DNA of 64,000 nucleotides from Ostrea edulis (Eukaryota): assembly GCF_947568905.1 (NCBI RefSeq), contig NC_079165.1, forward strand, positions 102,486,001-102,550,000, written 5' to 3'. How positions within the stretch are numbered: position 1 is the stretch's first letter; the number at the start of each line of letters is the position of its first letter. This document shows positions 541 to 61,625 of this stretch, piece by piece. Made by a program: the position numbers and the translations under genes. Under the pieces are notes generated by a model that saw only the letters and a list, made by a program, of their open reading frames with translations, had not been told where the DNA came from and made no database searches.

Positions 541-3500
541 ATGGGAGATAAAGCCTGCAACAGGTAAGCCCGTCTTATTCATAGTATATCACAGATTTTT
601 TAATGAATAGATACTTGTGGTAGCTTAAAGGTAACCAAGTAACTAGAACGTTGGGAAGTTGTGTGGTTTTTAATTCAGAAGCATCTAGTATTCAGATAGT
701 AAATACATTGTACAGGATACATATCTAAAGCTCTGTCTCTGATTCGTATTTCGATAGTTAAATGACCAGCAGATATACGGAACCGGGACATTTTCAAAAC
801 TTGATTTCTTCACAAAGGTCAAATTAGAGTACATCCTACACATTAATTCAAACATGTCAAATCAATTTGTTTCTTCTTCAAAATTATGCAAGTCTTCATC
901 TGTATCCTAACAAGCTTTAACTCATCTTTTACTCATTTTTTTTATCAATGTATGAACTATTGTCTATATCGCCGCGGTGGCTGAGAGGTTAGAGCGTTCG
1001 CCCCGCATGCGGAAGGCTAGGATTCGAATTCCGGTCGCGACAAACCTAAGTTGTTAAAACAGACAGTGACAGTTCCATCGCCAAACGCTCGGCATCAGGT
1101 GTGAATGTGACGGGTCCTCGGAGATGACCTTAAAAACGGATGACCCGTGTCACAGTAGGTGTAGCACGCTAAAGAACCCTCATTGCTCAATGGGCGTAAG
1201 TGCAGAGCATAGGCCTAAATTTGAAGCCATATATCTCCATACATCTCCATATGAGTGAAAAAATCTCGAGCGAGAAACATTAAGCAAGATACAATCAATC
1301 AAATGATCTTCTGTGTACTGAACTGGGTTTCCAAATGGAGACAATTCCGCTTCATGATTGTGTTTCTAATTACAAATAATTGAACGGATAATGCTTGTTT
1401 TCTTGTCTAGCAGGACATATACTGAAGGACTCGACTGTTGTGTAAATTATCTGTTTTCTTGTCTAACAGGACATATACTGAAGGACTCGACTGTTGTGTA
1501 AATTATATGTTTTCTTGTCTAACAGGACATATACTGAAGGACTCGACTGTTGTGTAAATTATTTATGTCTGTTTTCTTGTCTAGCAGGACATATACTGAA
1601 GGACTCGACTGTTGTGTAAATTATCTGTTTTCTTGTCTAACAGGACATATACTGAAGGACTCGACTGTTGTGTAAATTATTTATGTCTGTTTTCTTGTTT
1701 AACAGGACATATACTGAAGGACTCGACTGTTGTGTAAATTATTTATGTCTGTTTTCTTGTCTAACAGGACATATACTGAAGGACTCGACTGCTGTGTAAA
1801 TTATCTGTTTTGTTGTCTAGCAGGACATATACTGAAGGACTCGACTGTTGTGTAAATTATCTGTTTTCTTGTCTAGCAGGACATATACTGAAGGACTCGA
1901 CTGCTGTGTAAATTATCTGTTTTCTTGTCTAGCAGGACATATACTGAAGGACTCGACTGTTGTGTAAATTATCTGTTTTCTTGTCTAGCAGGACATATAC
2001 TGAAGGACTCGACTGTTGTGTAAATTATTTATGTCTGTTTTCTTGTCTAGCAGGACATATACTGAAGGACTCGACTGTTGTGTAAATTATTTATGTCTGA
2101 TTTCTTGTACAGCAGGACATATACTGAAGGACTCGACTGTTGTGTAAATTATTTATGTCTGTTTTCTTGTACAGCAGGACATATACTGAAGGACTCGACT
2201 GTTGTATAAATTATTTCCTACGAAACAAGAGTTGCCACCGTAAGTAATACACACACAATAACAATAATAATAGCAACAATAGTAATCACAACAACAACAA
2301 CAACAGCAATAGGTGTGTAACTATATAGTTATAGATACAACTGCTAGATTTTATAGAGATCCCAGTGAAGAAAAGCAATAACAGCAATAACAATAATAGT
2401 AATAACAACATCCATAAAAGAACAGCAATAACAAAAAACATAATAACAACATCAATAACAAAAACAATAATAATAACGACATCATCAACAACAACAATGA
2501 TAATAACAACATAAATAAAACAACAACAATAACAACAACATCATCAACAACAACAATAACAATAACATCAAGAAAAGAACAGTAACAACAATAGCAAGAA
2601 CAACAACATTAATAAAACAACAGTAATAATGACACGTATTTTAATCTACAGCAAATATTGCCACAAGAAAATGATGACAGGATTTGACTGTTTTTTTCTG
2701 CTGACACTAACTTCAACAAATATTATAATAGAAATACAGCCCCTTTTTTGACTAACACTGTAATGAATATTTACATTTAATAGCCTGTCAGCCGGGAACC
2801 TTTGGATTTAACTGCACTGACCACTGTTCACCTGGATCTTATGGGGATTTTTGCGGGCAAAACTGCACGGACTGTCTAAAGGAGGATTGTCACTACACTT
2901 ACGGATGTCCAAAAATGGGTGATTAAAAGTGCATGTTTTGAGACAACAGTTTTGATTATCAAGTCCGAATCTTCAAGAATGCATAAACTTGACTCGTCAA
3001 AATTGTAAAATGTTTTTATTTAGTTAGTTCTAATAACATTATAACAAGCTGCTTCGGGAAAAATTAAGCACTTTATTTTTTTCAAGGTACTGTAGTTAAA
3101 ACCAGCACAAAGTACTTCTGTTTGTTTTATTCTCTACAGTTTTTCAGTGTTTCCATTTTGAATGTTGAGATATTCATTGTCTTTGGAAGAGGTATTTCGA
3201 AAAGCAATATGAAATTACGATCTATTTTAAATGCATCACTTTAACACTCCCATTGTCTGTGTGTAAACAAGTTTCACACCTCTTGTTTACCAAAGCAGAA
3301 TAACTAAATGTATTGTACTTTGGATTGGAACCTTTGGATTCTAACCTCAGTAAGAAAACAATAATAAAGCCCGTTGTTCTGACAATGTTTGACTTTTGAA
3401 AACACAGAATTAGATGTAGAATCCGCCTCTTTCATATTTGTATCGTCCAATGTAAGATACAGAACCATAACTGATGGATGTTCGTAATCATTTATATTTC

Positions 3501-6500
3501 TAACATTTTAAAGGATAAGTGTGTATCCAAACCCACAGTTATTGCCTGAACCAAACTAACGCGGACCAGAACCTAAATTATAATTTGAAACCAAAATCAT
3601 AGGAATTTAGCGATCCAGCCAGAACGTTAAACTACCCGGAACCAAATTTATGCGATATTGATGTCCAGCATTCCACAAATCAAAAATGAGATGTCATGTT
3701 TGAAAATAGAAAATGAAAATATTCAATCGTTTGCGAACGATGAACACTGGTTGATGGTGGATAGGAAAGGTTATAACCTTGCTTTACATAACGACAAGAC
3801 ACACATTGGAACTGACTTTGTGACTCAAAATTGAACAATAGACATAAAGAACTATAGACACGTGAAAGCAATGCCCAACTCGTCGTCCTCTTCATGCACG
3901 CTCTACTACCCGGGAATGATAATGGCGATGCATACTATACCAAATATACCTCTAATTTCAAAGTTCTGTTTTGTGTAGCGTCTAAATACTATAGATAGGC
4001 TTGATATATCATATTTCTGTGTCACACATCGAGTTTACCTGAACTTCAACTTAAACAGTAAGAGATATATAAATGTAATTATGTATACTACATATACATG
4101 CAATAGCTGGTGAATGTGTTATTAGCAAAAATACCATGATAAACTATAATCTAGTGCATTGAGGAATTTACTTCTTGAGTTTTGAAAATAATGAAAAACG
4201 TTTGCTGCAAAAATTTTACAATCAAAAAAGCTTTGCTACTTTGATTTAACATACTAAACAGTCCGATAGGTTACAAATATGAAAAAACCTTTGACATTTT
4301 GACTTTTTTAAAAGAAAAAAAGTCAACCAAAACAACAGCAACAAAAACATAGGTCTATAGAAATGTTTGATTACTTATTTTTCTATCAGTGTATATAAGA
4401 TCTTGAAGAAAAATAAAAATGTTAATTTTAGAGTTATCTACCATGTCAATACCGGTAAACGTCAATTATTGATTTACAACAGAAAACTATCATTCAGTTT
4501 TGTTTCTGGTAGAGGAGTATTATTGTATTTAGAAAGACGTATGTTGTCAGAAAGGTTCTCAAATGTAAGCAAATATCATTTTGGTTTTTTTAAAATAAAA
4601 TGTACAAAGTAATAAAAAAAAACAATAAAAAAAAAAAAAAAAAAAAGAAAACGTGGCGATAACGAACGGTGATCAATCTGATTAATTCTATAAAATACGA
4701 AATTTAGAGCAGAGTGAACACGGACCAGTTGGGATTAGGTGTCTAGGATGAGTAAGCGTTCTTCTGTTGACGGGTCATATCCCCCGTGAGCTCTATATCT
4801 TGATCAGGTAAACGGAGTCATTCGTAGTTAAAATCAGTATGCAAAAAAAAAAAAAAAAAAAAAAAAAAACCCCAAAAAAAAAAACAACAACAAAAAACAA
4901 ACCGACACAATAGTTGGAATGAAACGCATTATATAGCATTTGAGCTATTAATAGGTTAAATAATTATAACGATCATGAAATTTGCCATTAACATTAATTT
5001 AGATATGAAACATACTCTGAGTAACATGACAGTGTTTGTCAGAAACACTAGCATCTGTATGAAACTGTTCACGACAATGTGTGGGTGAATTACGCTAATA
5101 AGATTAGAACTGCAGTGATAGGTCTTACTCACTTAAAGTGATCTACTGCTACCTATTGCACATACAATTCATAGCTAAAGATGGATTCTTGCCAAAATTC
5201 AGAAACACGAAAAGGTGGATTCTTGCCAAAATTCAGAAACACGAAAAGATGGATTCTTGCTAAAATTCAGAAACACGAAAAGGTGGATTCTTGCTAAAAT
5301 TTAGAAACATGAAAAGATGGATTCTTGCCAAAAATTCAGAAACACGAAAAGATAGATTCTTGCCAAAATTCAGAAGCATGAAAAGATGGATTTTGTTTTT
5401 GGATCCGTTTTCTTCAGTTAAGAAATATATATATATATAACATGATTCCAGTAGAAAAAATCGTTTTGACAAGAGATATTCAGTTCCATTTCCTATTGGA
5501 ATACATGTATATTGGGAAAAGCAGAAGAATATAGAAATTTGTTTATAATATTTTGAAGTTGCAATTCATCATGGAACAATTTCTCATTAGATCCGATACT
5601 CCTACTAAATTCCAAGGCATAATGTATATTATTGAATCAATGTTATCATATGAGAAAAGTCTAACCTCTATCAGTTTTGCAGAGATAAAAGTCAATGTGC
5701 AAATTTAAGTTCAAAGATTTTCTGAGGAAATTCGGTTAGTAGTTCTGCTTTGTAGAAAGACAAGAATATTCCTAAACATGCTGTGTATGATGGAAATGAG
5801 GAACATTTGAAATTAACCTTTGGGAGACACAACAGTGCACTGTAATGGAATATAAAGGTCATCGGGTATCATTAGATTGTGACCTTGAACTATCCACGAA
5901 GCAAAAGCAAGAACCTAGACATTCATTTTTATTGTGTCTAAACCATGCATGTATTCTATATCTTTTGCATGAAAAATGTCACGTTTCAACGTGTTTTATA
6001 CATATAAGAAGAATCCATCCTTAACGTTATATTTATGATTCAATACACCTGATTCATAATTGATACAAAAAGCTTCATAAATAGACTTATATTTTCAGTA
6101 ACAACAACTGAAATAGAAACAACTAATATTCCCTCAACTGTGTCATCGTCATTATCGAAATCGGTTGAAACTTTAGTGTCTACAACTGTAAAGGTTTTGC
6201 CAACAGTATTCACAAGAGAATTCACACAGCCACCGAATGTAGTATTAAAGGAACAGACTAATAACCTGTATATAGTACTGATAGGGGCAGGGGTCATCAT
6301 ATTTCTCCTACTTCTAATACTTCTTGCAGTATTGAGGAGATTGTGCGTTATACACACGCATAAAAACAATCCGAAAAATGAAATTGAATCGATTTTTGTA
6401 AAGAACGAAAACGAAGAGGACGAATACCAGGAAATTAACTTTGATGGCACTATGGTTAATCATGGCGATGTGTCGGGCAACCGTTACAATATCATAATGG

Positions 6501-6889
6501 AGGAGTTAACACGATCAAGAAGTACCAAGTATCAAGAAATCGGACCTAAAATAGATAAGGAAGGAAAGTCAGCCTATTCCCATTATCACGAAGTTGACAA
6601 TGAAAATAGTTCCTCAAATGAAAATAATGGAGGATATATAGAACCAGAATCACGAAGACCGACTCACTCCTATATAGAGGTGATAGAGCCTATGATACAT
6701 GCATCCGATCCTGCAAATAGTGACCAGGACGGGGGTAGCTCAGATAAATCTGACCACTTAGAGGAGTATCAAGATACTATGAATATAGAAACCAGTGATA
6801 AATCATGTTCAGATGATGTAAATGAGTCAAAACCTCACGATTCTAGCATGAGTGATACGTATCTCGACGTTGTGCACGGTTTGTCGTAA
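541..6889 (+). CDS. G1: mini Draper/MEGF10/SCARF-like EGF-TM-Tyr-motif receptor, spliced model 336 aa
   Basis: Exons 541-563 (MGDKACN|R, GTAAG donor), 2178-2239 (TYTEGLDCCINYFLRNKSCH, CAG/GTAAGT), 2784-2918 (CQPGTFGFNC...CHYTYGCPKM, TAG/GT) and 6099-6889 (Thr/Ser stalk, TM IVLIGAGVIIFLLLLILLAVL, Tyr-rich tail). They total 1011 nt, in frame with no stops. An upstream leader exon spliced to AG at 531-532 cannot be excluded. Confidence 0.8.
971..1302 (+). mobile_element. tRNA-derived SINE (family A, Meta/Mesc-like core)
   Basis: A box TGGCTGAGAGG, B box GGATTCGAATTCC, core CCCGTGTCACAGTAGGTGTAGCACGCTAAAGAACCCTC and (AATC)n tail; homologous copies at 47953 and 52444. Confidence 0.85.
1395..2215 (+). 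repeat. 56/62-bp minisatellite, 14 units, each a 3' splice site plus the 5' half of the G1 CC exon
   Basis: CAGGAC anchors at 1411, 1467, 1523, 1585, 1641, 1703, 1765, 1821, 1877, 1933, 1989, 2051, 2113 and 2175; unit TGTTTTCTTGTCTAGCAG|GACATATACTGAAGGACTCGACTGTTGTGTAAATTAT. Confidence 0.92.
2250..2630. repeat. Degenerate (ACA)n/(ATA)n low-complexity tract
   Basis: Imperfect AAC/AAT trinucleotide runs in G1 intron 2. Confidence 0.85.
4652..4842 (-). mobile_element. Naiad-type Penelope-like element, 3' end fragment
   Basis: Matches the recurring 3' terminus GGTGAAGATAACGAACAGTGATCAATC...ATCAGGTAAACGGAG seen throughout the window. Confidence 0.75.
5178..5395. repeat. 34-bp minisatellite, about 6.5 units
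   Basis: Unit AAAAGATGGATTCTTGCCAAAATTCAGAAACACG with a 34-nt period. Confidence 0.9.
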
Positions 6890-9976: not shown

Positions 9977-10377
9977 CCACCACGACAATATTTGAAGGAG
10001 ACAATGATTCTACTATGTTCACACATCCTGGATTTACTCATTCCATTGAACCAGTTACCTGTATGGATCGCCCGATACCCAATAAAGGAATGATTTCAAA
10101 AATGATCATAATTAACGGAAGCGTCATCATTGCTTTGCTTTTGGTGCTCATTATCACTATATCTATCAGAAAGTATTTGATGTTCCTGTACTGGAAAAGA
10201 AACGTGAAGTTAGATCATGCTCCACTAACCATGATTAATCCAGTTTATTCGGAAGCTGAAGGGGTGTCTGGAGATTATATCTATATAAAGCAAAACAAGC
10301 GAAATAACGAAGGTGATTCTAGAGGAAAACATCCGAGTTGTAGAGAGGAATTGGGGTTAATGTGTTTCAAAGTATGA
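9977..10377 (+). pseudogene. G2: receptor paralog terminal exon (stalk, TM, short tail with NPVY); upstream exons apparently decayed
   Basis: TTTTAG acceptor in phase 1, TM MIIINGSVIIALLLVLIITISI and tail INPVYSE. A possible frameshifted CC-exon relic (GFYEIMEGCQ) lies at about 8529-8595; no intact EGF exon was found. Confidence 0.55.
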
Positions 10378-16457: not shown

Positions 16458-19400
16458 ATGACTGTTAAAACTTACGGTTGGTATTATAGTTCCCCATAAA
16501 GTTTTTAATACTAAAATGATATGTTTCATGTTATAGTTTACTGATCGTTTATAACATGCATGATATTGTTTTCTCTTCTGTTGAATTTAGGAGACTATCG
16601 CTGTTTTGCAAATTATTTCTGGAGCGACCCGGAGAATGGCTGTGTCGGTATGTAATGACATTTCTGTACACAATGAGAATGGCTGTGTCGGTTTATGTAC
16701 ACAATGAGAATGGTTGTGTCGGGTTATGTACACAATGAGAATGGCTGTGTCGGGTTATGTACACAATGAGAATGGTTGTGTCGGTATGTAATGACATTTA
16801 TGTACACAATGAGAATGGTTGTGTCGGTATGTAATGACATTTCTGTACACAATGAGAATGGTTGTGTCGGGTTATGTACACAATGAGAATGGTTGTGTTG
16901 CTATGTAAATTTATTTACATTCAGAAACGTATTACACATTGAGAATGCCTGTGTGGGTGTGAATGTACATCTGTACACATTAACAATGGCTGTGTCGGTA
17001 TGTTAAGGTATTTTTGTACACATGAGAATGGCTGTGTCGTTATGTAAAGGTATTGTTGTACATATGAGAATGGCTGTGTCGGTATGTAAAGGTATTTCTG
17101 TACACATGAGAATGACTGTGTCGGTATGTAAAGGTATATCTGTACACACGAGAATGGCTGTGTCGGTATGTATAAACGTATTGTTGTACACATGAAAATG
17201 GCTGTCTCGGTATCTAAAGGTATTGTTGTACACATGGGAATGGCTGTGTCGTTATGTAAAGGTATATCTGTACACATGAGAATGACTGTGTCGGTATGTA
17301 AAGGTATTTTTGTACACATGAGAATGACTGTGTCGTTATGTAAAGGTATATCTGTACACATGAGAATGGCTGTGTCGGTATGTAAAGGTATTTTTGTACA
17401 CATGAGAATGGCTGTGTCGGTATGTAAAGGTATTTTTGTACACATGAGAATGACTGTGTCGGTATGTAAAGGTATTGTTGTACACATGAGAATGACCGAG
17501 TTTGTTTGTACAAGTATTCATGTACACATTGAGAATGGTTGTGTCGGTATGTATAAACGTATTTATGTACTCAATGAGAATAGTTGTTTGGTAGGTAAAT
17601 CTATGTACACATTAAGAAAAGTATCTATTTACATATTGAGAATGCATGTGTGGATATGAGAATGTATTTATGTACACATTGACAGTGGTTGTGTGGGTAT
17701 GTAAGTGTTTTTAAAGTGCCCTGAAGTCATGGGTGCAAAAATGGTGAATAGGTTCAGAAATACCTTTGAATTAAGATATAAGAATGAAAACGTATGACCG
17801 TGCGTGCATTCAATACCGAAATATTCCACGTCGAAGTTAGCAATATTTTTGCACCTGCCAGAAATCAATCAACTGAACTTCCGGTTTTACTATATTTAGC
17901 CATAATGCCATTTGGCGTCACATCACATCAATTTCAAATATTCCATTAAACGCAAGCGATACCTGCACTTCTTCGAACGAAATCGACCTCCACATGTCAT
18001 TTGAAGCGTCTTCCTTTGAAGATTATCCCGACGAGGACGTGCAGGACATCTTCCCTTACCAATATGAGACAGATGCAACGGATTCTTACGATTCCGATGA
18101 GTTAAATGGAAAGAATGTTGAACCTGAACAACATCGCCTCGGAAACACGGAATGGTAGGGCGCTCTTAGACTGTAAATTTATAAAATAAATTATGGGAAA
18201 TACGAAATTGATCAATCAACTGTACATCATTCTTAATTACATCAATGATGAATTACAGATGTCAAATTGTCATATTACGCCGGGGTGGTATGGTATAGAC
18301 CCTTAATTATATTATTACAGACAAAATTACTGGTTTCGATGGTGTATATTGGTGTAGTTAATTACTTCAATGATAAAGTGCCGAAATACATTCTGTCCTC
18401 TTGTTCGATACCTCCTCTATAATAGTACATAACACTTCTATAAGATTTCTGTTTTAAATTATCATGTAATAGAGAATTATCTTTTTTTCTATTATTAAGT
18501 TTAACATTTCATTTGATTTCTTTATTCTTTCACAAATTTACATGGTTTACAAATCATATTATGTGTCAATGTGGATTTTGTACCAATATGCCAACTGCCA
18601 AGGAGAGTGTATGCTGCACCGAATTACCAGGGGTTGATGCGAAGAAGGAGTCATTCAACAAGGAACTGGCCTGTATTGCTGAACACCCCGACTTTTCACC
18701 AGTGTGTTCAGACGTGTATGTGCTCGAGACAGGACACTACCAATACCGATCCCAGTGTGGAGAAATGAGGGCAACAATTGAAGAGCACGTCATTTTTATT
18801 ATCCATTCAATCAAATAATATGATAATTCACATAGTCATTGGGTCAGATTGCAAGTTTATCATTAGTGAATAATTACAAACATTTCCTGGAATTACAGGC
18901 GGAACAGATACAGAGCATGCAGACAATTTGTTTGATGGTGCTTGGGATACCTAGGACACAAGGTGCGAGTCCCTCTACCGTCATGTGTTGCGATAAAGTT
19001 ACGGAATTCCTTTGTCTCTGAGGAGTATCAAGGATTCCATGCACCTGAGTGATGGTATGATTTTGATGAAGCAACTTTAAAAACAAATGTACGATTCATA
19101 GATGATGCATACAAAGAATTCAAGCACAATATTCTAACAGAAGTGGTCCAAAAATAATACATTTATGAACATATTGGTATCATAATATAATAATTATAAA
19201 TATACTAAACACTGGCAAAACAGAATATCACAAAATCAAAGTTTTAGAAAGCATCAGCCACACAAACAATATTTAAATAAAATGTTTCTGCACCCGGGAA
19301 CGAGACGAGGACCCTGCTCTCATGTTACCATCTTGTTTCTTTTCTTCCTTTCTTTTTTTTTTTATAGGTTTTATCATTTTTAACTCGGACTACTATTACA

Positions 19401-31312: not shown

Positions 31313-31345
<33 letters not shown>

Positions 31346-38341: not shown

Positions 38342-40564
38342 ATGGATAATTCCGGAATTTGCGCCAGGTATTATAATAATTTTATTATACATTATACCCT
38401 TGTTAATCAATATTAGAGATGAAAATATAAGTATATGCCTTGTCCTCTCTAGATCCAAGGATGGCAGTATAAAATGCTGTGTAAACCATTATTTGAAAGA
38501 AAATTCCTGTGTAGGTGAGTTGAACATTGAGAAGGTCAGAAATAGAATCAATGATGAAAAGACAGGTTACAACCATTTTTGTCTCATCTCTTCAGAATGC
38601 CCGCTCGGATCTTTTGGTTGGGGTTGTAAAACTCTTTGCCCTGCTGGAAGTTACGGTTGGTTGTGCTCAAACCAATGCAATTGTCTGGATCATGTTTGTG
38701 ACTACGTCAAAGGTTGTACAACAAAGAACAGAACGGCTAGTACCATTCTGCCTGCTACGACATCGAGAATTCCCACAGGTTCCAGATCAGACATTCAAAG
38801 CACGTCAGGTGATAGTTCCACTGGTAAGTTTCTTCGCCAATATGCGATGTTGTCTTCAATTTAGAGATTTGACAAAGTAAACGAGGAATCCTTTTATTCC
38901 CTTACCACGTGATAGGTTTAGATAAATGATATAAACCATTCTGAGACAGAAAATAGTCAGCATCCCGATGGTCATAAGGTGATACGAATTTGGTAAACTA
39001 TTCATCTGACTATATTGTGTGCCCAGGGTCCTTGCTTGCCCTACTCCTAAATTTGTATTCTTTGTAAGCATCATGAGATTGCTCATTTGCAGAACCGAAT
39101 AAACAAACAGCATGTGTTAGGAATAAGTTTTTAAAGCATACACAAACTTTCTTTGACTCAATTATTAACAATGAAATGGACTAATACTGACAAAAGTTAT
39201 CATACATTGACCTGTCACATGAACTGAAGATGACGTACGGCAGTAAATACCGATGTCTGACTTTGATCAAAACATGACTCACAGCATTTGGTAACATGTA
39301 ATATGACATTATTGGAACAATTAACAATACACAAGACATTCTTAAGACAATAATGCATAAACATATTTCACAAAGCAGTTGGATCAGATATGATTGTGTA
39401 CATAATACTGATAAAGCATTTAAACACATTTGAAACGTTTCGAATCTCTTTAAAAGGTTTCCACATATCATTAACTATATACGATCAAAAGTCGACGCAG
39501 ATCTCTATTCTATATCACATTTCAAAATTTTAATACCAAAATTTAACAATGAATTATTAATATGCAATTGAACACACTTTTGGTTTTTTTAGGAAGATCC
39601 AATCAGCAAATATTTGTAGAGACAAAAAATACTAGACTAAGTATCACAATCAATAAACTCTCAGCGAACAGAAACATTTTTACCATTCTTTCTATAAACA
39701 CATCTTGTTGAAGGCTAGTATGGACTAGTATAGTCATCAGCAGTTAATCATCTTTGTCCATTTGTTGTCGTTCATTCTCCAGAAACGCTGTATACATTTT
39801 CTACAGGCTTTATCATGAAGATATGAGAAGGGTTATATAATATTTCATTTATATTGTTTTATTCAGGTTTGGGGTTGAAATCCACAATGCAACCAATATT
39901 TACATCACCAACATTATCAATATCGAATATTATACAGTCAACGTCGACAATCTTAATATCGACAATGACCAAAACAGCTGGGGTGAAACCTGATAAACCC
40001 GCGTCCGATTTTGCCATTTTTCTTGTTCCTATTGGGATTATCATTGTAATACTACTTATCGTGATTATCCTACTTATTGCTTGGAAACTCAATTTAGTTC
40101 AACGTCACAATCAGATTTTGACTTCAGAGGTAGCTACTTTAAAGAAGATACCTGCAACCGATATAGAATCAGCGAACTATGAGGAAATCAACACTGTATC
40201 AGATCGGATTGGAGTTAAGGAAAGCTATCGAAATTTTCACACGATATCTGAGCCAGATGTTTATCAGTTATCGCTCTCTAAGTACCAGGAAATTAATGCA
40301 GAGGAAGAGAAAATCACAGAACATTCAACAATGGAAAATGAAGCTGAGATAAACACCTCGGTCATGTATCTCTTACCCACGACAGCTACATCAAAACACA
40401 CCTATATTGACATTGTAGAATCCTCCCCCGAGATCAGCGAGACGTGGAAAAGAAATAGTGATGATAGTGAGACAGTTTCAGTAACAGAGAAATATGATGA
40501 TACCATCTGCTCTCCGTATTATGAGTGCATATCATCCGAAAACATGTACTTACACCCCATTTAA
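38342..40564 (+). CDS. G5: receptor paralog, spliced model 337 aa
   Basis: Exons 38342-38367 (MDNSGICA|R), 38453-38514 (SKDGSIKCCVNHYLKENSCV, GTGAGT), 38596-38823 (ECPLGSFGWGC...CDYVKGC plus Thr/Ser stalk, GTAAGT) and 39867-40564 (TM FAIFLVPIGIIIVILLIVIILLIAW, tail). Total 1014 nt in frame. Confidence 0.82.
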
Positions 40565-43450: not shown

Positions 43451-43693
43451 TTGATTGGTGCATTAAAATTGGTACCGTATAAGTTTTCCATTGTGACCCC
43501 TGGGTCGAGGCCTCTGCTGGTGGACTGTTAGTCCCCGAGGGTCTCTACAGCCCAGTAGCGAAGTACTTCGTTACTAGCTTGAAAATACGGATGTATATTT
43601 AATTGCTGTGATAAAATTTAGAAATTCATTTCAAAATTAAAGATTATCTCCCTCATGCAAAACTCTTATCCTTAGACGAATTTTGCTCCACTT

Positions 43694-49263: not shown

Positions 49264-49298
<35 letters not shown>

Positions 49299-50493: not shown

Positions 50494-52026
50494 ATGGATT
50501 TCGGAAGATGTAACAGGTATGAAAATAAAAAATAAGAGAATGAAATCGATTCCAAGATGATTCTGGAAAAAAAAAATCAAAATTTGATATGGACATGACT
50601 TGAAGTAATTGCGAAATATAAATTGTCTTCTCTTTTTTTTTTTTTTTTTTAATCAGCTCCTTGAGCAGTAGGATTGTATGTTGCTCTAACTTTTATTTGG
50701 AGGGAGGTGTTTGTAAACGTAAGTATTTTATTAACAAAAATAAGAATCAACATTAAAGATATACTTTTATCAAACTGGAAATAACTCAAAATCATTTAAA
50801 ATTGTTCTTCACATTTCGAATCAATTAAGTATCATTAGAAACAAATGGCAAAGATCTGTTATGTTATATTTACTTCCTATTTACACGGCTCCTCTGACGT
50901 GGAGATTTTTTTTACAGCGTGTCCAGGCGGGACGTACGGGGTGAACTGTTCCCAGCGCTGTCCCACTGGTTTGTATGGTGAACGCTGCGGTTACTTCTGT
51001 AAGTGTCCACCAGAACAATGCATTGCTGCTACTGGGTGCATCACAACATCGCCGGCAGCATCTTCTCAAATGACAACAGGTGTGGTTTTAATGAATGAAA
51101 ATAAATAGCGTGACTACAATAGTATCTGATAAAAAAGATTCACATATGTTTAGATAAATTTTATTGTGAACTAAATATTATCATTTTTAAAAAAAGTACA
51201 ATTTTTTTTAAATGAATGCGAATTTATACTGCGTGTATATCCATATGATTGAGTGACGATGTATTCTATTGAATTTTCAGAAACAACCATGACGGTATAC
51301 GCACATGAAACATCTACAGGAAGCAGTCTGAAAACAACTGATTTACTTGATTCAACAGTGAGGAATGGTATTTTTTCTATGCAAGAGGAGACCGAGCCTT
51401 TCCCATATAAAATGATTATGGTAGGAATGGGTGCTGTTATACTCTGTTTTTTAGTTTTCTCATTGATTCAAATATGCTCCAAAGTGCGGTCCAAACGCAA
51501 ACGTAAGAGAGTCACACCATCTGAAGAGAGTGGCACTTATCATGAAATCCCAGCAGCAGGTGAAATAGCACCACTGGAGATCGCAAGACATTACAATGAA
51601 ATAACAGAGCACAGTGACGGCGGATACAAAGAAATCCAACAACAAAAGAGACAGCAGGAAATGCAGCAAGTTGGACTCTATCGGGAGCTGATATCTGACG
51701 ATATCAAACTGGAAAACATTGATACACTACATGAAACTATTTCCCAAAATATGTACCTAACAGTCGACAACGCAACAAGAGACGAGGAAAACGCAAGTTC
51801 TGATGACGAAAATAGAGAATCGTACCTAGAACCTTCCTCCAAAAAAGAAAAACACCTTTACACCGACATTTTGGAATCTTCATATGACGTCACTTCCGAT
51901 ACGGGTACTGGAGGAGATGGCATTCTGTCGTGTTCAGATGATGGACGAGATGATAGCGTGTCAACAGATTCAGCAGGCAGAAGTGGATCAGTGCAACAAA
52001 ATGACATTTACTTGGACGTCATTTGA
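50494..52026 (+). CDS. G6: receptor paralog with a canonical ITAM-spaced motif, spliced model 330 aa
   Basis: Exons 50494-50516 (MDFGRCN|S), 50657-50718 (SLSSRIVCCSNFYLEGGVCK, GTAAGT), 50918-51079 (CPGGTYGVNC...CIAATGC) and 51281-52026 (TM MIMVGMGAVILCFLVFSLIQIC, tail). Total 993 nt in frame. Confidence 0.83.
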
Positions 52027-54783: not shown

Positions 54784-54995
54784 AAAAGGTGAAGATAACG
54801 AACAGTGGTCAATCTCATAAATCCCATAAGCAATGCAAAATAGATAGTTGGGCAAACATGAACCACTGGACACACCAAAGGTAGGATCAGGTGCCTAGGA
54901 GGAGTAAGCATCCCCTGTCGACCCGTCACACCCGCCGTGAGGAGTAAGCATCCCCTGTCGACCCGTCACACCCGCCGTGACCCCTATATCATGTC
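54784..54995 (-). mobile_element. Naiad-type PLE 3' fragment with ~40-bp internal duplication, just upstream of the G7 acceptor
   Basis: Shared terminus plus duplicated GGAGTAAGCATCCCCTGTCGACCCGTCACACCCGCCGTGA. Confidence 0.8.
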
Positions 54996-55026
54996 ACATC
55001 TAAATTAAAACTTTTCTTTTTTCCAG

Positions 55027-55733
55027 TTGACAGAATGTTTACGAGACAGGAAGTGCATTCATTGAATGGAAGTAAAGATGATGTTGAAAGATTGAATTCA
55101 TCACAAACTACAATACGTTCAGTGAAAAATACTGTCGAAATAATCGAACATGTACTTACCACGAGTCCAGAAAGTATTCAAAATGATGAGATGTGTAATT
55201 GTTATAATCTGTTCCTTGCCCTGCTTATATTGGGGGTCATTGTGTTGTGCCTACTAACAACAGTCTTAGTTTTGATTTACGAACTAAGAATTAATCATAA
55301 AACATATTTCTGTGTTAAAAATTCTACCGACATCCTGCAGAAAAATGTGCCGAAACGAAACAATGTGTCGAAACGAAATAATGTATCGAAACGAAACAAT
55401 GTGTCGAAAAGTACGAGGTCCAGAAACAAGAAAAGGCACTTTGGAAGAGCTGATCGTCCAGTTTCCTTCGACTCACAGATGGCCGATCATGAGGAAAACG
55501 ATTTATCCGAGGATTCCGACGGATATGTCAGACCGGAGAACCAAGACGAAAAGTACGAGTATGCAGAGGTTTTGTCTGATCTTGACGATACTGTAAATGA
55601 ACGAAATGCTTCTGAAAATCCCGTTCTGGAGTGTTCACGTTCTCAGTACTACAATTCAAAGTGCGTTGAGGAACACATCGAAGATCAAACCCCAATATAT
55701 CTTAATGTGAATTGTGGAGAATATAATGCATAA
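55027..55733 (+). CDS. G7: receptor paralog terminal exon (stalk, TM, Tyr tail); upstream exons not found
   Basis: Strong TTTTCTTTTTTCCAG acceptor in phase 1, open for 235 codons; TM LFLALLILGVIVLCLLTTVLVLIY, YVRP-x8-YAEV and C-terminal YLNV. Confidence 0.65.
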
Positions 55734-58835: not shown

Positions 58836-61625
58836 ATGAAATTTCACGACATGGATTTCCTTGTTATTTACAGTTTTCTTTTGTGTTTGATTTTTTCTGT
58901 TATACAGGCCACAGGAAAGTGTAACACGGGACAAATTGGTGAAGACAAAAAGTGAGTATTCACTGCTGATGTGAACGTTTAACATGGTTTATTGCATGCT
59001 CGGACTGTTGTTACCTTGTCGAGATACTGCCATACATGTACATGTAATTTCATTTAGTACCACCTGTCTGTGTAATCATTACCAAATATGGAGCGTCATC
59101 AAGGTCAAAGGGTGCGTTGGCTGTTCTGTCAACGTAACGAATGGGTCAACCATGTCATATTTTAGAACTTAAATCTAGTTTATTTTTTAGAACAATACAT
59201 AAAAATAAAAACATAAACAAAAACAATAAAATGTCTTTCTTTGTTGTTTCATCGGGTGATGAAGGTAGCAAGCATTGCAGAAAAAATTTGCATAATCCGC
59301 TTACGCGAGTTATACATTTTTCTGCGATGCTAGCTACAGTGTCCATTCATCACCCGATGAAACAACAAAGAAAGCAGTTTATTGTTTAAATGAAGAAAAA
59401 TGTTCATCTGAGAAGCATTAAATATTTTAAACAAAGATAAGATTTTGTTGGCATTACCAAGATGCCACAATCGAGAATGGAATTTAGAAATGCAATGTTA
59501 ATTCTATCAAAACCTCCTTACGCAGATGTGCATTGGTATGACCTGCCACTTAGTATTAATAAATATGCATTGCTTCAAGCTCATTTGTTTTACCGCTCGC
59601 GGTAGGTCAGTGGCAGAGCGTTAGCTTCGATGAAGAGCTAATAATTTACCAATGAGAGCGCGTCTTCCAATTTGGGTAATAGTTGAAACGTTTCTGTGTT
59701 TCAAAAACGATAGAAAATGCATTGTTTCTTCCTATATATTGTCGGTGCAAACCGATATTAGGTAATTTTACAAGCTATGATATTTCCCCGATCTATTGAG
59801 ACATGGACTGCGTTGTAACATTTAACGTCCAAAGTATAAAAAGGAGACGAATGGAAATTTGATGTTACAAGTTTTGGGATCCCTGATTTCCCCGTGGTGT
59901 AAATATAGAATAGATGGTGTCAAATTTTTATTAGACAAAAAGTTACTAGTCCCGTGTTGCGGCAGGCGTTTGCATGTTAAAAAACCCTCACTAATATCGT
60001 CACGAGCGTTAAGCATAGGTCCAGATTAAATTTGTGGCACTTCTTGATAGGACGTAAAACTACCAATCAATTTTTGTTTTAATCGGACTTCTTTATTCCG
60101 CTCAATAAACCATTTACTGAGAAAATACAATAAATCCGATTGTATTGCGATTGTGCAATGCAGAAAAGCAAACCTAACTAAAAATAATACATATTTTGAA
60201 TGCATATAATGATGTATAATAGATGATTGACTAAATAATATGTTTACATTTATGATAAAATCATGCATATATTTTCATAACATTATATCTACTGTATATG
60301 TCAACAGGATACTGCTAGATTTACTGAATAAGGATCCTATGAACCGCATTGCCATTCTTTAACAAAACAATATCTTGTGGACTTGTAATTTTACAATATT
60401 ATTGTATAAATTGTATTTCACTCAATCTTTTACATGAATATTACTTCCAGGTTTCCTTGCTGTACAAACTATTTTCCTGTTGAAGGAGTATGCAAAGGTA
60501 CATGTATATCTGGTGCATTCTTATAATTATTCAATCTACAAGTATATTCTATTAGTTTGATGATTTATTTAAGGAATGATTTCGAGGTGAAAATAATGCC
60601 GATATCAGATTTGTTTGGAATATGAAGACCAAATCTTACCAGAGGGGCTTGTCTTCCGGATTGTGGAAAATAAATAAAAATATGAATCCTCTTTAAAAGT
60701 ACAGTCATTCTGATAGATATGCCGAGTTTTGGCGATTAATTCATTTTCATCTTTTAATTAAACCCCCTGCACGTGGTATCACATTAATACAAGGGACGAA
60801 AGCCGCTATCTTAGAAAAAATACTTCCATTTTGTTCGGACTGCGAATCATACGGGTTCTGTTTGAATTATAAGTGGATATATAAGAATAAAATAATGTAA
60901 AGATCCTAAAACACGTTTATAAGTATGGACTATTCAAATTTCCGTGTATTTAATATATTTGTGCAAGATTATGTTTTCAATGTCGACTAAGACGATATTT
61001 TAGATATTCTATCTAATACAATCTAATACCTTAATTGATAGATTTGTAGTCTTTGGATAGGGTATTATATACGGAGATATATAGAAAAAAATATCCACTT
61101 CGTGATCAGTCGTACTTCAAACAGCTTTAACTATTGTGAATGTTTACCAATAATTCTGTCAAATATCGAGCAAAGTCTTTACAACCTGGCCAAATTTTAT
61201 TTCTGAACCTTTTTAATGCATGTATTTTTTATCAGCGTGTCCGCCTGGATTATTTGGAAATAACTGTTCCGTTCCTTGTCCACATCCTTCTTATGGTATT
61301 CGGTGCATGGGCGTGTGTAAGTGTGATAGATCACTGTGTGACGTCATCACTGGATGTCCGGACAATAACATAGACAACACAACAGGGAAAGGTATATGTA
61401 CCAGCGCTGGCCCTAACGGAACACCGTCAATATGTCATTTTGTTAGTCATTTGTTAAATATTCTCTCTCTTTTTTCAGCGTGTCCGCCTGGATTATTTGG
61501 AGGTAACTGTTCCTTTCCCTGTCGATATCCTTATTTTGGTATTCTGTGTATGGACGAGTGTAAGTGTGATAGATCACTGTGTGACGTCATCACTGGGTGT
61601 CCGGAAAAACCCACAACAGTGAAAG
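58836..61625 (+). CDS. G8: receptor paralog with signal peptide and two EGF exons; 3' exon not identified in the window
   Basis: Exons 58836-58951 (MKFHDMDFLVIYSFLLCLIFSVIQA-TGKCNTGQIGEDK, GTGAGT), 60451-60497 (FPCCTNYFPVEGVCK), 61236-61391 and 61479-61625 (CPPGLFG.NC...CDVITGCP), all in compatible phases. Confidence 0.78.

What the first reader, a model, noticed from the sequence alone, without database searches (positions are those of the whole stretch)
541..61625. Tandem array of eight hyper-diversified miniature Draper/CED-1-like receptors: candidate immune or allorecognition receptor complex
Seen in sequence: eight co-oriented units share exon phases and a fixed Cys skeleton (C-x9/12-CC-x-[NG]-aromatic...C, then CxxGx[YF]GxxCx3CxxGx[YF]GxxCx3C...GC), followed by a mucin-like stalk, one TM helix and a Tyr-rich tail. 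The CC exon is exactly 62 nt in G1, G5 and G6, yet the non-Cys ectodomain residues are nearly all different between copies. Established knowledge: CCxG[YF] followed by EGF-like repeats marks the Draper/CED-1/MEGF10/Nimrod phagocytic receptors, which normally have many EGF repeats. Inference: a one-module version that is undergoing birth and death (two apparent relics, one exon duplication) resembles paired-receptor or allorecognition loci. Databases probably label these loosely as MEGF10-like or SCARF-like, so the new part is the architecture and cluster behaviour rather than the domain.
Basis: partly seen in the sequence, partly recalled or inferred. Interest (0 to 1): 0.85.

Follow-up and report, generated by a model that had tools for sequence, protein, structure and literature searches.

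The report
Oyster mini scavenger-receptor gene array
A 61-kb stretch of the flat oyster (Ostrea edulis) genome holds a conserved row of small genes for cut-down SCARF/MEGF10/Draper-type receptors, at least one with two alternative signalling tails; the family is real and barely annotated, but the proposed hyper-diversification and allorecognition role are not shown.

Summary
On the + strand of Ostrea edulis OX387705.1 (~102.49 Mb) lie six genes (G1, G3, G4, G5, G6, G8), all built from exons in the same phase. Each has a 7-8-codon first exon (M-x4-5-C), a 57-68-nt "CC" exon, one 8-Cys EGF exon, and a last exon coding for a Ser/Thr stalk, a TM helix and a Tyr-rich tail.

The two "relics" are intact tail exons. 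T2 is the short-tail alternative last exon of G1; NCBI annotates both isoforms in near-identical paralogues 62-95 kb upstream. T7 is an open ORF conserved at the syntenic place in Saccostrea.

The EGF module matches SCARF1 and Tie2 by sequence profile. There is no EMI domain, no Pfam hit, no repeat array and no signal peptide in the models.

A profile of the tails finds only 51 clusters among 1.84 billion proteins. All the named ones are from Ostreidae and most are called "uncharacterized".

G4, G5 and G6 have 1:1 Saccostrea orthologues in the same gene order, so the array is old. Only the G1/G3 block shows recent duplication, tail swapping and gene conversion.

dN/dS is high everywhere, not just in the ectodomain. 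An immune role is plausible, since a C. virginica homologue is expressed in haemocytes, but untested. Similar arrays were noted elsewhere in this genome by this scan.

The parts
541..563 (+). G1 exon 1 (M-G-D-K-A-C-N plus 2 nt); no signal peptide
   Evidence: Exact match to the start of RefSeq P0002. There is an in-frame stop 3 codons upstream and the donor is AG|GTAAGC.
1396..2215 (+). 56-nt minisatellite of 14 copies. Each copy holds the 3' end of intron 1 plus the first ~41 nt of the G1 CC exon. The last copy is the real exon.
   Evidence: TRF and listing of the copies. The paralogue U1 has a single copy.
2178..2239 (+). G1 CC exon, 62 nt (65 nt if the first AG of the NAGNAG acceptor is used)
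2784..2918 (+). G1 EGF exon (8 Cys), phase 1-1
6099..6889 (+). G1 long-tail last exon T1: stalk, TM helix and 184-aa Tyr-rich tail. It contains a gene-conversion tract shared with G3 at about 6620-6800.
9977..10377 (+).
   Evidence: Phase-1 acceptor and open ORF. RefSeq P0002 uses this exon. Copies 93-95% identical are the last exon of the 207-aa and 203-aa isoforms P0099 and P0100 upstream.
16458..16476 (+). G3 exon 1 (MTVKTY plus 1 nt) as in RefSeq LOC125680946
16591..16647 (+). G3 CC-like exon (C-F instead of C-C; the first Cys is also lost)
20708..20842 (+). G3 EGF exon
21116..21933 (+). G3 long-tail last exon T3
33395..33417 (+). G4 exon 1 (MQPGVCS plus 2 nt)
   Evidence: The gene call starts at this position.
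33497..33564 (+). G4 CC exon, 68 nt
34004..34198 (+). G4 EGF exon. The donor at 34198 reproduces the annotated 338-aa product; an alternative donor at 34150 gives 322 aa.
34294..35024 (+). G4 tail exon
38342..38367 (+). G5 exon 1 (MDNSGICA plus 2 nt)
   Evidence: The spliced model is identical to RefSeq P0060, LOC125680951.
38453..38514 (+). G5 CC exon, 62 nt
38596..38823 (+). G5 EGF exon plus the start of the stalk
39867..40564 (+). G5 tail exon
50494..50516 (+). G6 exon 1 (MDFGRCN plus 2 nt)
   Evidence: A gene call with a 330-aa product starts here.
50657..50718 (+). G6 CC exon, 62 nt
50918..51079 (+). G6 EGF exon
51281..52026 (+). G6 tail exon
55027..55733 (+). It is either an alternative last exon of G6 or a separate gene without an ectodomain.
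   Evidence: An intact 219-codon counterpart lies at the syntenic place downstream of the G6 orthologue in Saccostrea cucullata. No EGF exon lies upstream in either species.
60451..60497 (+). G8 CC exon, 47 nt. The 5' end of the gene is unresolved; an in-frame ATG lies at 60434.
61236..61391 (+). G8 EGF exon a
61479..61625 (+). G8 EGF exon b. It is a tandem duplicate of exon a (88% nt identity), separated by an 87-nt intron that stays in frame. The G8 tail exon lies beyond the window.

Best explanation
The window is part of a larger (at least 160 kb) tandem array in Ostrea edulis. The array encodes an oyster-specific subfamily of miniature class-F-scavenger / MEGF10-type single-pass receptors.

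Each protein is about 320-340 aa and is laid out as follows:
- a short N-terminal cap, C-x8-12-CC-x-N-[YF]-x6-C;
- one SCARF/Tie2-type double EGF module, giving 12 Cys in all;
- a 60-85-aa O-glycan-type stalk;
- one TM helix with a strongly basic cytoplasmic flank;
- a 145-185-aa acidic tail.

The tail carries three conserved phosphotyrosine-type motifs:
- [ED]-x-Y-[QHE]-E-I, 20-33 residues after the TM helix. This resembles the Src-family SH2 ligand pYEEI.
- S-Y-[LIV]-x-P-x8-10-Y-[IVT]-x-[VI]-[ILV].
- A C-terminal Y-L-[DE]-V.

Inferred mechanism: the small Cys-rich head binds a ligand, polyanionic, microbial or apoptotic by analogy with SCARF1, MEGF10 and Draper. Clustering then leads to tyrosine phosphorylation of the tail and recruitment of SH2 or PTB adaptors in haemocytes.

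G1-type genes carry two alternative last exons. The same head can therefore be joined to the long multi-Tyr tail or to a different TM helix with a short tail (NPVY/YIYI in O. edulis). This is a splicing-made receptor pair.

The array is old. G4, G5, G6 and T7 are orthologous and syntenic between Ostrea and Saccostrea, and they evolve fast throughout. The G1/G3 block is still being duplicated, recombined (tail swaps) and partly homogenised by gene conversion.

Shown: gene structures, family limits, homology of the EGF module, synteny, duplications, alternative isoforms as annotated.
Inferred: ligand type, phosphotyrosine signalling, haemocyte function, N-out topology without a signal peptide.
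For: Gene models:
- Exon phases and splice sites are consistent.
- The spliced G5 model equals P0060, and the first 333 aa of G1 equal P0002.
- Annotated calls for G3, G4 and G6 fit in position and length.

Homology of the head:
- The EGF-exon profile hits SCARF1 residues 58-97 at E 6.7e-8 and the Tie2 EGF region at about 1e-5.
- The whole-ectodomain profile hits Tie2 residues 266-308 at E 2e-8 and SCARF1 at 4e-6.
- The AF2 model has pLDDT 88. Its best Foldseek matches are the SCARF1 N-terminal fragment 8hn0, then SCARF2, MEGF10/11, PEAR1, CED-1, Tie2 and Draper.

Family limits:
- The tail profile finds 51 representatives at E <= 1e-3 among 1.84e9 proteins, 16 of them at E <= 1e-10.
- All named members come from O. 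edulis, Saccostrea cucullata, S. echinata, Magallana gigas, M. angulata or Crassostrea virginica.
- The first and third tail motifs are each found in 26 of 28 family sequences and the middle one in 25.

Age of the array:
- The pairs G4-P0011, G5-P0008 and G6-P0012 have 100% support in the tree.
- The order G1/3-type, G4, G5, G6, T7-like is the same on one S. cucullata contig.

Alternative tails:
- LOC125680950 has a 337-aa and a 207-aa product from one start, ending at the long-tail exon and the short-tail exon respectively.
- A second upstream gene has 337-aa and 222-aa products.
- P0100 is a G3-type head, 86% identical to G3, joined to the short tail.
- The window's T2 is in the right phase to follow the G1 EGF exon and would give the same junction as P0099.

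Recent dynamics:
- Segmental duplicates are 93-97.5% identical.
- A tract of about 180 nt in the G1 and G3 tails is 95-100% identical within a 60-70% background.

Topology: the flank after the TM helix is basic (RRL, SRKL, SKVRSKRKRKR) and the flank before it is acidic or neutral.

Haemocytes: the family member LOC111105266 of C. virginica (P0085) is listed among genes higher in circulating agranulocytes (PMC13070813).
Against: - There are no expression, binding or phosphorylation data for these genes.
- Pfam recognises neither the head nor the tail.
- The structural matches are weak: Foldseek E 0.009 at best across the two searches, TM below 0.5, VIA Z below 4.
- The annotated proteins lack a signal peptide, which is unusual for a disulfide-rich ectodomain of ~130-155 residues. 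The 5' ends could be incomplete. The distant paralogue LOC125682385 encodes a leader in the homologous first exon.
- The tail motifs are not canonical ITAM, ITIM or NPxY. The NPVY of the short tail is not conserved in Saccostrea.
- The RefSeq model for the window's own G1 joins T1 to T2, giving a two-TM product of 466/467 aa, rather than showing a clean EGF-to-T2 isoform.
Confidence: 0.6

Rival explanations
1. This is a hyper-diversified immune or allorecognition receptor complex. Its ectodomains are under diversifying selection and the locus turns over quickly by birth and death, like paired-receptor or allorecognition loci.
For: - In the recently duplicated G1/G3 block the heads differ more than the tails. 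For G3 vs U3, ectodomain dN is 0.082 against tail dN 0.019. For G1 vs U1 the figures are 0.097 against 0.028. For G3 vs U2 there are 9 nonsynonymous changes to 1 synonymous.
- The same head occurs with different tails.
- Segmental duplicates, an exon duplication and gene conversion are all present.
- Clusters of SCARF-like single-pass genes lie under schistosome-resistance peaks in Biomphalaria (PMC13712769).
Against: - G4, G5, G6 and T7 have 1:1 counterparts in the same order in Saccostrea.
- In the recent duplicates dS is also 2-5 times higher in the heads, so the contrast fits mosaic age or conversion of the tails rather than selection on the heads.
- Omega is 0.41-0.73 in three of four ectodomain comparisons, and the 9:1 count is not beyond the roughly 4:1 site ratio.
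- Orthologue identity in the head's non-Cys/Gly positions is about equal to that of the tail.
- Among paralogues the head is more conserved than the tail.
- No polymorphism data were available.
- From general knowledge, oysters are solitary and have no known allorecognition system.
Confidence: 0.15
2. These are housekeeping engulfment or adhesion receptors with no role in pathogen recognition. Examples would be clearance of apoptotic cells, tissue remodelling or cell-matrix contact. They are kept as an old multigene array because each copy has its own tissue or stage.
For: - Ancient orthologous lineages lie in conserved synteny.
- The nearest known proteins (SCARF1, MEGF10, Draper, CED-1) are best known for clearing apoptotic cells and for adhesion (established knowledge; SCARF1 structure paper PMC11563577).
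- The C. virginica homologue was listed under the efferocytosis pathway, although that label follows from its MEGF annotation.
Against: - Sequence evolution is fast everywhere: orthologues are 34-66% identical and omega is 0.3-0.8 in recent copies. That is unusual for housekeeping receptors.
- The family is lineage-restricted.
- The G1/G3 block is still being duplicated.
Confidence: 0.2
3. Much of the apparent architecture comes from gene prediction. The missing signal peptides, the two-tail isoforms and the tail-only units would be artefacts, and several units would be pseudogenes.
For: - RefSeq models for G1 fuse T1 to T2 into an implausible two-TM protein.
- T7 is not annotated in either species.
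- Some paralogues do have leaders.
- No transcript data could be examined here.
Against: - All exons keep open frames and consensus splice sites in the same phase in genes that are only 20-40% identical.
- The initiator ATG sits 4-5 codons before the first Cys in four paralogues. All four have a purine at -3, and in G1, G5 and G6 the frame upstream is closed by a stop within 13 codons.
- The 250-codon open frame holding T7 would stay open by chance with probability of about 1e-8 at this base composition (my estimate). It also has an intact counterpart in Saccostrea.
- The short-tail isoforms are annotated independently in three O. edulis genes, and a 202-aa gene in S. cucullata carries a short-tail exon of the same kind.
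Confidence: 0.05

Closest known systems
Class F scavenger receptors SCARF1/SREC-I and SCARF2 (crystal structures 8hn0 and 8hna; PMC11563577)
   Same: - Best sequence-profile match with the EGF-exon profile (Tie2 scores better with the whole-ectodomain profile) and best Foldseek match among solved structures.
- The module C-x2-G-x-F-G-x2-C-x3-C-x2-G-x-[YW]-G-x2-C-x3-C-x-C-x4-5-C-x4-5-G-C aligns to SCARF1 residues 58-99.
- The Foldseek hit to the human SCARF1 model covers its N-terminus, residues 28-116.
- Single-pass layout with a long cytoplasmic tail.
   Different: - One module here, against a run of repeats in SCARF1; the 210-residue SCARF1 fragment alone gave five further weak repeat matches to the profile.
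- A mucin-like stalk takes the place of the rest of the EGF rod.
- No signal peptide in the models.
- The tail is unrelated.
- The family is restricted to oysters.
MEGF10 / MEGF11 / PEAR1 / Draper / CED-1 engulfment receptors
   Same: - The same type of EGF repeat.
- A CC-x-[GN]-aromatic motif before the first repeat.
- Tyrosine-based tail signalling.
- One O. edulis short-tail paralogue is named 'protein draper-like', and two Crassostrea/Magallana members are named 'MEGF10_11' or 'MEGF11'.
- These proteins fill the Foldseek list.
   Different: - No EMI domain: Pfam gives no hit, and only about 25 residues precede the EGF module.
- One module instead of a long repeat array.
- The long tails have no NPxY and no canonical ITAM.
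- NPVY occurs only in the O. edulis short tail and is not conserved in Saccostrea.
Tie2 (angiopoietin-1 receptor) EGF-like domains 2-3
   Same: Best PDB hit of the whole-ectodomain profile (E 2e-8). Tie2 residues 266-308 have the identical Cys spacing and also end in G-C.
   Different: Tie2 embeds these repeats between Ig domains and has a kinase domain. Here the module stands alone and there is no catalytic domain.
'Potential scavenger class F-like' single-pass receptor clusters of Biomphalaria glabrata (LG5R region; PMC13712769)
   Same: Molluscan clusters of single-pass genes with Tie2/SCARF-type signatures, a TM helix and a domain-less cytosolic part, proposed as pathogen-interaction genes. 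Earlier notes of this scan describe lectin-EGF and lectin-EGF-phosphatase relatives elsewhere in this oyster genome. These parallel subgroups 1B and 1C of that paper.
   Different: - A gastropod, and no sequence orthology was shown here.
- Those proteins are described with signal peptides and mostly small cytosolic parts.
- No conserved three-motif Tyr tail, alternative tail exons or one-module head is described there.
Vertebrate paired receptors (e.g. KIR, Ly49, SIRP, by general knowledge)
   Same: Near-identical heads occur with different signalling tails. P0100 and G3 are 86% identical in the head. LOC125680950 has long-tail and short-tail isoforms.
   Different: - The pairing is made largely by alternative last exons that also swap the TM helix.
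- There is no charged TM residue in the short form and no canonical ITIM/ITAM division.
- The fold is EGF, not Ig or lectin.
Neuregulin-1-type membrane proteins (N-out, no cleavable signal peptide; general knowledge)
   Same: An EGF-bearing N-terminal ectodomain apparently translocated without a signal peptide. A TM helix with a basic cytoplasmic flank serves as the only topogenic signal.
   Different: There is no sequence relationship, and the topology here is inferred, not shown.

Membership tests
Class F scavenger receptor / MEGF10 / Draper / CED-1 superfamily (InterPro 'MEGF10/SREC1/2-like') | EGF-like repeats of the SCARF/MEGF/Tie2 type (C-x2-G-x-aromatic-G-x2-C-x3-C ...) | tested here: met
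   Profiles of the EGF exons and of whole ectodomains hit SCARF1 (E 6.7e-8 and 4e-6) and Tie2 (about 1e-5 and 2e-8), with all Cys aligned.
Class F scavenger receptor / MEGF10 / Draper / CED-1 superfamily | A long array of such repeats forming the ectodomain | tested here: not met
   There is exactly one EGF exon per gene, and two in G8. The rest of the ectodomain is a Ser/Thr/Pro stalk.
Draper / CED-1 / MEGF10 subgroup | N-terminal EMI domain | tested here: not met
   No Pfam EMI hit even at E 10. Only a cap of about 25 residues, C-x8-12-CC-x-N-[YF]-x6-C, is present. The cap resembles the C-terminal end of an EMI domain by pattern only.
Draper / CED-1 / MEGF10 subgroup | Cytoplasmic NPxY (PTB adaptor site) plus YxxL or ITAM | tested here: inconclusive
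   The long tails have no NPxY. They have Y-x-x-P-x8-10-Y-x-x-[VI], which is not a canonical ITAM. The short tail T2 has NPVY and YIYI in O. edulis. One copy has DPVY, and the Saccostrea short tail has no NPxY.
Class F scavenger receptor / MEGF10 / Draper / CED-1 superfamily | Type I topology with a cleavable signal peptide | tested here: not met
   The models start M-x4-5-C with no hydrophobic leader. In-frame stops lie 3, 4 and 13 codons upstream in G1, G5 and G6. The paralogue LOC125682385 has the leader in the homologous exon. Transcript 5' ends could not be checked.
Class F scavenger receptor / MEGF10 / Draper / CED-1 superfamily | Binding of polyanionic or apoptotic ligands and a role in engulfment | not testable with these tools
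   There is only indirect evidence: a C. virginica family member is listed among haemocyte (agranulocyte) transcripts (PMC13070813).
Nimrod (NIM-repeat) receptors | NIM repeats (C-x-P-x-C-x3-C-x-N-G-x-C-x2-P-x2-C-x-C-x2-G-[YF]; consensus recalled from general knowledge) after a CCxGY motif | tested here: not met
   The CC-x-[NG]-aromatic motif is present, but the following module has the SCARF/Tie2 spacing and no C-x-P-x-C ... N-G-x-C pattern (alignments).
Paired activating/inhibitory receptors | Closely similar ectodomains combined with different signalling tails | tested here: met
   P0100 against G3: the heads are 86% identical, one with the short tail and one with the long tail. LOC125680950 has 337-aa and 207-aa isoforms from one start.
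Paired activating/inhibitory receptors | Canonical ITIM in one partner; a charged TM residue recruiting an ITAM adaptor in the other | tested here: not met
   The T2 TM helix has no charged residue. The conserved tail tyrosines do not sit in [SIVL]-x-Y-x-x-[ILV] contexts, apart from occasional S-x-Y-Q-E-I or T-x-Y-Q-E-I.
Oyster three-motif-tail family (defined here) | Tail with [ED]-x-Y-[QHE]-E-I near the membrane, S-Y-x-x-P-x8-10-Y-x-x-[VI], and a C-terminal Y-L-[DE]-V | tested here: met
   G1, G3, G5 and G6 have all three motifs. G4 lacks the C-terminal one. T7 has divergent versions. The first and third motifs are each found in 26 of 28 family sequences and the middle one in 25.

The most novel reading that the evidence does not exclude
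Oysters keep an ancient, syntenic array of signal-peptide-less (N-out, type III) one-module SCARF-like receptors. In it, alternative last exons couple one ligand-binding head to two different TM-plus-tail cassettes. This would be an invertebrate counterpart of paired activating/inhibitory receptors, made by splicing and reshuffled by unequal crossing-over. T7 would be either a third cassette or a head-less transmembrane tyrosine adaptor.
Probability: 0.3. Interest if true: 0.7.

Novelty: new variant of a known kind. Interest (0 to 1): 0.5.

Why it matters
Bivalve genomes carry hundreds of 'MEGF10/draper-like' genes. These appear in nearly every haemocyte transcriptome but are treated as one undifferentiated mass.

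This locus defines a clean subfamily restricted to oysters. It has a recognisable head, a diagnostic three-motif tyrosine tail and conserved synteny. It therefore gives named, testable units: orthologues of G4, G5 and G6 exist in Saccostrea, and more distant members of the family in Crassostrea and Magallana.

If confirmed, the alternative long and short tails would show how an invertebrate can wire one recognition module to two signalling outputs.

The contrast between ancient conserved members and a still-duplicating G1/G3 block offers a built-in comparison for studying how innate receptor repertoires evolve. The G1/G3 block shows tail swaps, a gene-conversion tract and minisatellites derived from exon-intron junctions.

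The apparent loss of the signal peptide is a concrete cell-biological puzzle.

For aquaculture, these are candidate haemocyte surface receptors in a species whose main parasite lives inside haemocytes (general knowledge). No link to disease was tested here.

Tried and rejected
1. Pfam scans of single exons and of 13 full-length family proteins gave no EGF, EMI or tail family above threshold. There was only a sub-threshold DUF7198 hit (18-19 bits against a cut-off of 27) on the G3 tail, not reproduced in other members. It was dropped.

2. Word-indexed protein searches with a tail exon and with the tail alignment returned only 2-3 proteins. The exhaustive profile search was needed.

3. I first searched for signal-peptide first exons with the wrong phase. 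The real first exons are 7-8 codons with two extra bases. A good-looking leader exon at 58851-58938 upstream of G8 is out of phase with the G8 CC exon and was not used.

4. A regex and tblastn search found no EGF or CC exons upstream of T2 or T7, in either species.

5. DNA self-comparison found gene-derived similarity only between the G1 and G3 tails. All other repeats are transposon fragments.

6. Structure comparison gave only weak scores (Foldseek E 0.009 at best, VIA Z below 4), so I do not lean on it.

7. dN/dS between Ostrea and Saccostrea was not attempted because divergence is too deep (34-66% protein identity). Only recent paralogues were used, and the counts are small.

8. Pfam on the large non-family ORFs of the window gave nothing.

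9. A literature search by LOC numbers found one paper. Searches for an oyster MEGF10/draper-like family study found none on this subfamily.

Full report
**Where the window lies**

A tail-exon query returned a 100% identical RefSeq protein of Ostrea edulis (LOC125680946). Its gene lies on OX387705.1. The window corresponds to about 102,486,001-102,550,000 of that 109-Mb chromosome. The window has no N runs and is 32-40% G+C.

**Checking the observation**

A six-frame scan for C-x2-G-x-[YFW]-G-x2-C-x3-C finds seven sites, all on the + strand: 2786, 20710, 34006, 38598, 50920, 61238 and 61481. Relaxed patterns add none.

Each site lies in an exon with a polypyrimidine/AG acceptor two bases before the first Cys codon and a GT donor one base after a codon. 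All EGF exons are therefore phase 1-1.

Upstream of each lies a short exon carrying CC-x-[NG]-aromatic ... C in the same phase scheme. It is 68 nt in G4, 57 nt in G3 (where CC has become C-F) and 47 nt in G8.

Downstream lies a long last exon with a phase-1 acceptor that codes for the stalk, the TM helix and the tail.

The first exons are only 7-8 codons, M-x4-5-C, plus two bases and an AG|GTA donor. They sit at 541, 33395, 38342 and 50494.

Splicing these exons reproduces RefSeq P0060 (G5) exactly and the first 333 residues of P0002 (G1). Annotated gene calls of 338 aa and 330 aa start and end where my G4 and G6 models do.

The ectodomain has 12 Cys. The stalks are 41-49% S+T+P. The tails have 9-10 Tyr and 14-21% acidic residues.

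**The two 'relics'**

T2 (9977-10374) and T7 (55027-55730) have no EGF or CC exon of their own. Both do have strong phase-1 acceptors and open frames.

T2 is 93-95% identical to the last exon of two annotated O. edulis proteins. P0099 (207 aa) has a G1-type head. P0100 (203 aa, named 'protein draper-like') has a G3-type head.

Their genes lie 62-95 kb upstream of the window, in a segmental duplicate of the window's G1-G3 block that is 93-97.5% identical to it.

In that duplicate, one gene (LOC125680950) has two products from the same start. A 337-aa form ends at the long-tail exon. A 207-aa form ends at the short-tail exon 3.7 kb further on. A neighbouring gene has 337-aa and 222-aa products.

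The window's G1 has the same layout: T1 is followed 3.1 kb later by T2. T2 is in phase with the G1 EGF donor and would give the same junction as P0099. I therefore read T2 as the alternative last exon of G1.

The RefSeq model for this copy instead splices a weak donor near the end of T1 to T2, giving 466/467 aa and two TM helices. That looks like read-through.

T7 lies in a 250-codon open frame. At this base composition I estimate the chance of that at about 1e-8. An intact 219-codon counterpart, 34% identical, lies downstream of the G6 orthologue in Saccostrea cucullata, again without an EGF exon upstream. T7 is therefore conserved coding sequence. It may be a second last exon of G6 or a head-less gene. 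Neither annotation includes it, so this stays open.

**What the head is**

Pfam recognises nothing.

A profile of the seven window EGF exons and one Saccostrea sequence hits human SCARF1 residues 58-97 (E 6.7e-8) and the Tie2 EGF region. A profile of 14 whole ectodomains hits Tie2 residues 266-308 (E 2e-8) and SCARF1 (E 4e-6). Every Cys is aligned, including the terminal G-C.

An AlphaFold model of the G5 head built on that alignment is confident (pLDDT 88). Its best Foldseek matches are the SCARF1 N-terminal crystal fragment, then SCARF2, MEGF11, MEGF10, PEAR1, CED-1, Tie2 and Draper. The scores are weak (E 0.009-0.3, TM below 0.5, VIA Z below 4), as is usual for small disulfide rods.

The head is therefore a single SCARF/MEGF/Tie2-type module under a short CC cap. 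It has no EMI domain and no repeat array.

**What the tail is**

The tails align poorly overall, 17-50% identical. Two Tyr, one Pro and one Asn are invariant among the seven aligned tails.

Across 28 family sequences three motifs recur:
- an acidic [ED]-x-Y-[QHE]-E-I, 20-33 residues after the TM helix;
- S-Y-[LIV]-x-P-x8-10-Y-[IVT]-x-[VI]-[ILV];
- Y-L-[DE]-V near the C-terminus.

The first resembles the Src-family SH2 ligand pYEEI (established knowledge), and G5 has YEEI itself. None of the motifs is a canonical ITAM, ITIM or NPxY.

The short tail has NPVY and YIYI in O. edulis. One copy has DPVY, and the Saccostrea short tail has no NPxY. I do not lean on that motif.

**Family limits**

A profile of the tails, scored against 1.84 billion representative proteins, gives only 51 hits at E <= 1e-3 and 16 at E <= 1e-10.

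Every member with a name is from Ostreidae: O. edulis, Saccostrea cucullata, S. echinata, Magallana gigas, M. angulata or Crassostrea virginica. Almost all are called 'uncharacterized protein'. Two records say MEGF10_11 or MEGF11.

At least twelve annotated O. edulis genes belong to the family, all on the same chromosome.

The ESM Atlas lists about 20 further mollusc clusters of similar size without Pfam domains (feature scores up to 0.95), followed by MEGF10-named clusters. A wider molluscan superfamily is therefore likely.

**Age and dynamics**

In a maximum-likelihood tree G4, G5 and G6 each pair with a Saccostrea protein at 100% support. G1 and G3 group with two Saccostrea proteins.

One S. 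cucullata contig carries, in the same orientation and order:
- a 202-aa short-tail gene;
- a G1/3-type gene;
- a G4 orthologue;
- a G5 orthologue;
- a G6 orthologue;
- the T7-like ORF.

Most of the array therefore predates the split between Ostrea and Saccostrea.

The orthologues are nevertheless only 41-66% identical in the head and 34-52% in the tail. The non-Cys/Gly head positions (30-54%) are no more diverged than the tail.

Among the window's paralogues the head is better conserved (37-44%) than the tails of the older paralogues, which are 17-22% identical to the G3 tail; the G1 tail is 50% identical to it.

The G1/G3 block behaves differently:
- It has been duplicated two or three times recently.
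- One copy has lost the long-tail exon and joins a G3-type head to a short tail.
- The G1 and G3 tails share a tract of about 180 nt at 95-100% identity inside 60-70% background. This is a gene-conversion tract over the central tyrosine motif.

Nei-Gojobori estimates for the recent copies:

| Comparison | Region | omega | Nonsyn:syn changes |
|---|---|---|---|
| U2 vs U3 | head | 0.41 | 5:3 |
| G1 vs U1 | head | 0.46 | 14:7 |
| G3 vs U3 | head | 0.73 | 12:4 |
| G3 vs U2 | head | 2.3 | 9:1 |
| four pairs | long tails (T1, T3) | 0.27-0.83 | 12:4 to 21:15 |
| three pairs | short tail (T2) | 0.8-1.6 | 6:1 to 11:2 |

The head dN is 3-4 times the tail dN, but the head dS is higher too. This fits mosaic ages, with tails homogenised or recombined, at least as well as selection on the head. 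Constraint is weak throughout. Positive selection is not demonstrated.

**Signal peptide**

Twelve of 17 annotated family proteins start a few residues before the first Cys with no hydrophobic leader.

In the window the ATG sits 4-5 codons before that Cys in four otherwise very divergent paralogues, each with a purine at -3. The frame upstream is closed by stops 3, 4 and 13 codons away in G1, G5 and G6.

A distant paralogue (LOC125682385, at 61.8 Mb) encodes a hydrophobic leader and the homologous G-x-x-G-I-C in one first exon. The leader therefore appears to have been lost in this subfamily.

The TM flanks are acidic or neutral on the N-side and strongly basic on the C-side. By the positive-inside rule they predict N-out insertion, as in neuregulin-type proteins. 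This is inference, and an unannotated upstream exon is not excluded. In G4 the in-frame sequence upstream of the ATG is hydrophobic but has no ATG.

**Function**

There are no direct data.

The closest characterised proteins bind modified lipoproteins, microbial ligands or apoptotic cells and drive engulfment (SCARF1 structure paper PMC11563577; general knowledge for MEGF10, Draper and CED-1).

A C. virginica member of this tail family, LOC111105266, is listed among genes higher in circulating agranular haemocytes (PMC13070813; membership checked).

In the snail Biomphalaria glabrata, clusters of 'scavenger class F-like' single-pass genes with Tie2-type signatures lie under a schistosome-resistance peak (PMC13712769).

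My best reading is a haemocyte scavenger or engulfment-type receptor family that signals through tail tyrosines, with long-tail and short-tail versions of at least the G1-type and G3-type heads. I put this at about 0.6. Of that, the structural and evolutionary part is near 0.85 and the functional part near 0.5.

**Novelty**

The kind of thing is known: molluscan expansions and clusters of SCARF/MEGF10-like single-pass receptors. I found none of the following described in the searched literature:
- this delimited oyster subfamily;
- its one-module head;
- its three-motif tail;
- its alternative TM-plus-tail cassettes;
- its conserved synteny;
- its apparent lack of a leader.

Earlier notes of this scan report similar 'minimal EGF receptor' arrays at other places in this genome. 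This locus is one of several.

Noticed in passing
window 1396-2215: A 56-nt minisatellite of 14 copies. Each copy holds the polypyrimidine/AG end of intron 1 plus the first ~41 nt of the G1 CC exon. The 13 upstream copies read TGT-TGT|GTAAAT, a donor-like site. The last copy is the real exon and reads ATAAAT there, so it lacks that donor. The paralogue 62-95 kb upstream has one copy only.
   Followed up: partly
window 16661-16785 and 16933-17599: Minisatellites of 31 nt and 42 nt just after the G3 CC-like exon. Their consensus contains the last bases of that exon plus its GTATGTAA donor (compare). This mirrors the G1 case. It is also present in the upstream duplicates.
   Followed up: partly
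window ~6620-6800 and ~21664-21844: A gene-conversion tract between the G1 and G3 tail exons. About 180 nt are 95-100% identical inside 60-70% background. The tract covers the S/G-Y-I-E-P ... Y-I-E-V-I motif and the acidic stretch after it.
   Followed up: yes
L002 and L003 (OX387705.1 102,390,636-102,439,292): A recent segmental duplicate (93-97.5% identical) of the window's G1-G3 block. It carries at least four more family genes, including a G3-type head joined directly to the short-tail exon after loss of the long-tail exon.
   Followed up: yes
window 11532-11903, 13349-13720, 19423-19776, 23116-23493, 32887-33134, 37715-37877, 42148-42383, 54785-54941: A repeated element of about 350 nt, present in at least 8 copies in both orientations and 80-93% identical. 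It fills much of the intergenic and intronic space. One copy lies directly upstream of T7. It was not classified.
   Followed up: no
window 58851-58938: A convincing leader-like ORF piece (M-D-F-L-V-I-Y-S-F-L-L-C-L-I-F-S-V-I-Q-A ...) with a GT donor, 1.5 kb upstream of the G8 CC exon. It is out of phase with that exon. The 5' end of G8 stays unresolved.
   Followed up: partly
window 33290-33394: The frame of G4 exon 1 stays open for about 35 codons upstream of the ATG. It codes for a hydrophobic stretch (I-I-V-S-F-I-F-V-L-F) without any ATG. This may be the remnant of a lost signal peptide.
   Followed up: no
window 43641-44522 (+) and 44876-45574 (-): Two long ORFs of 294 and 233 codons between G5 and G6 with no Pfam match. 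They are probably parts of mobile elements. A 38-nt tandem repeat lies at 43186-43449 and a 30-nt one at 45918-46179.
   Followed up: partly
L005 5695-5985 (Saccostrea cucullata JAVVLV010013036.1): An extra, unannotated EGF-type exon (8 Cys, then a Thr/Ser run) between the G5 and G6 orthologues of Saccostrea. It has no counterpart in the O. edulis window.
   Followed up: no
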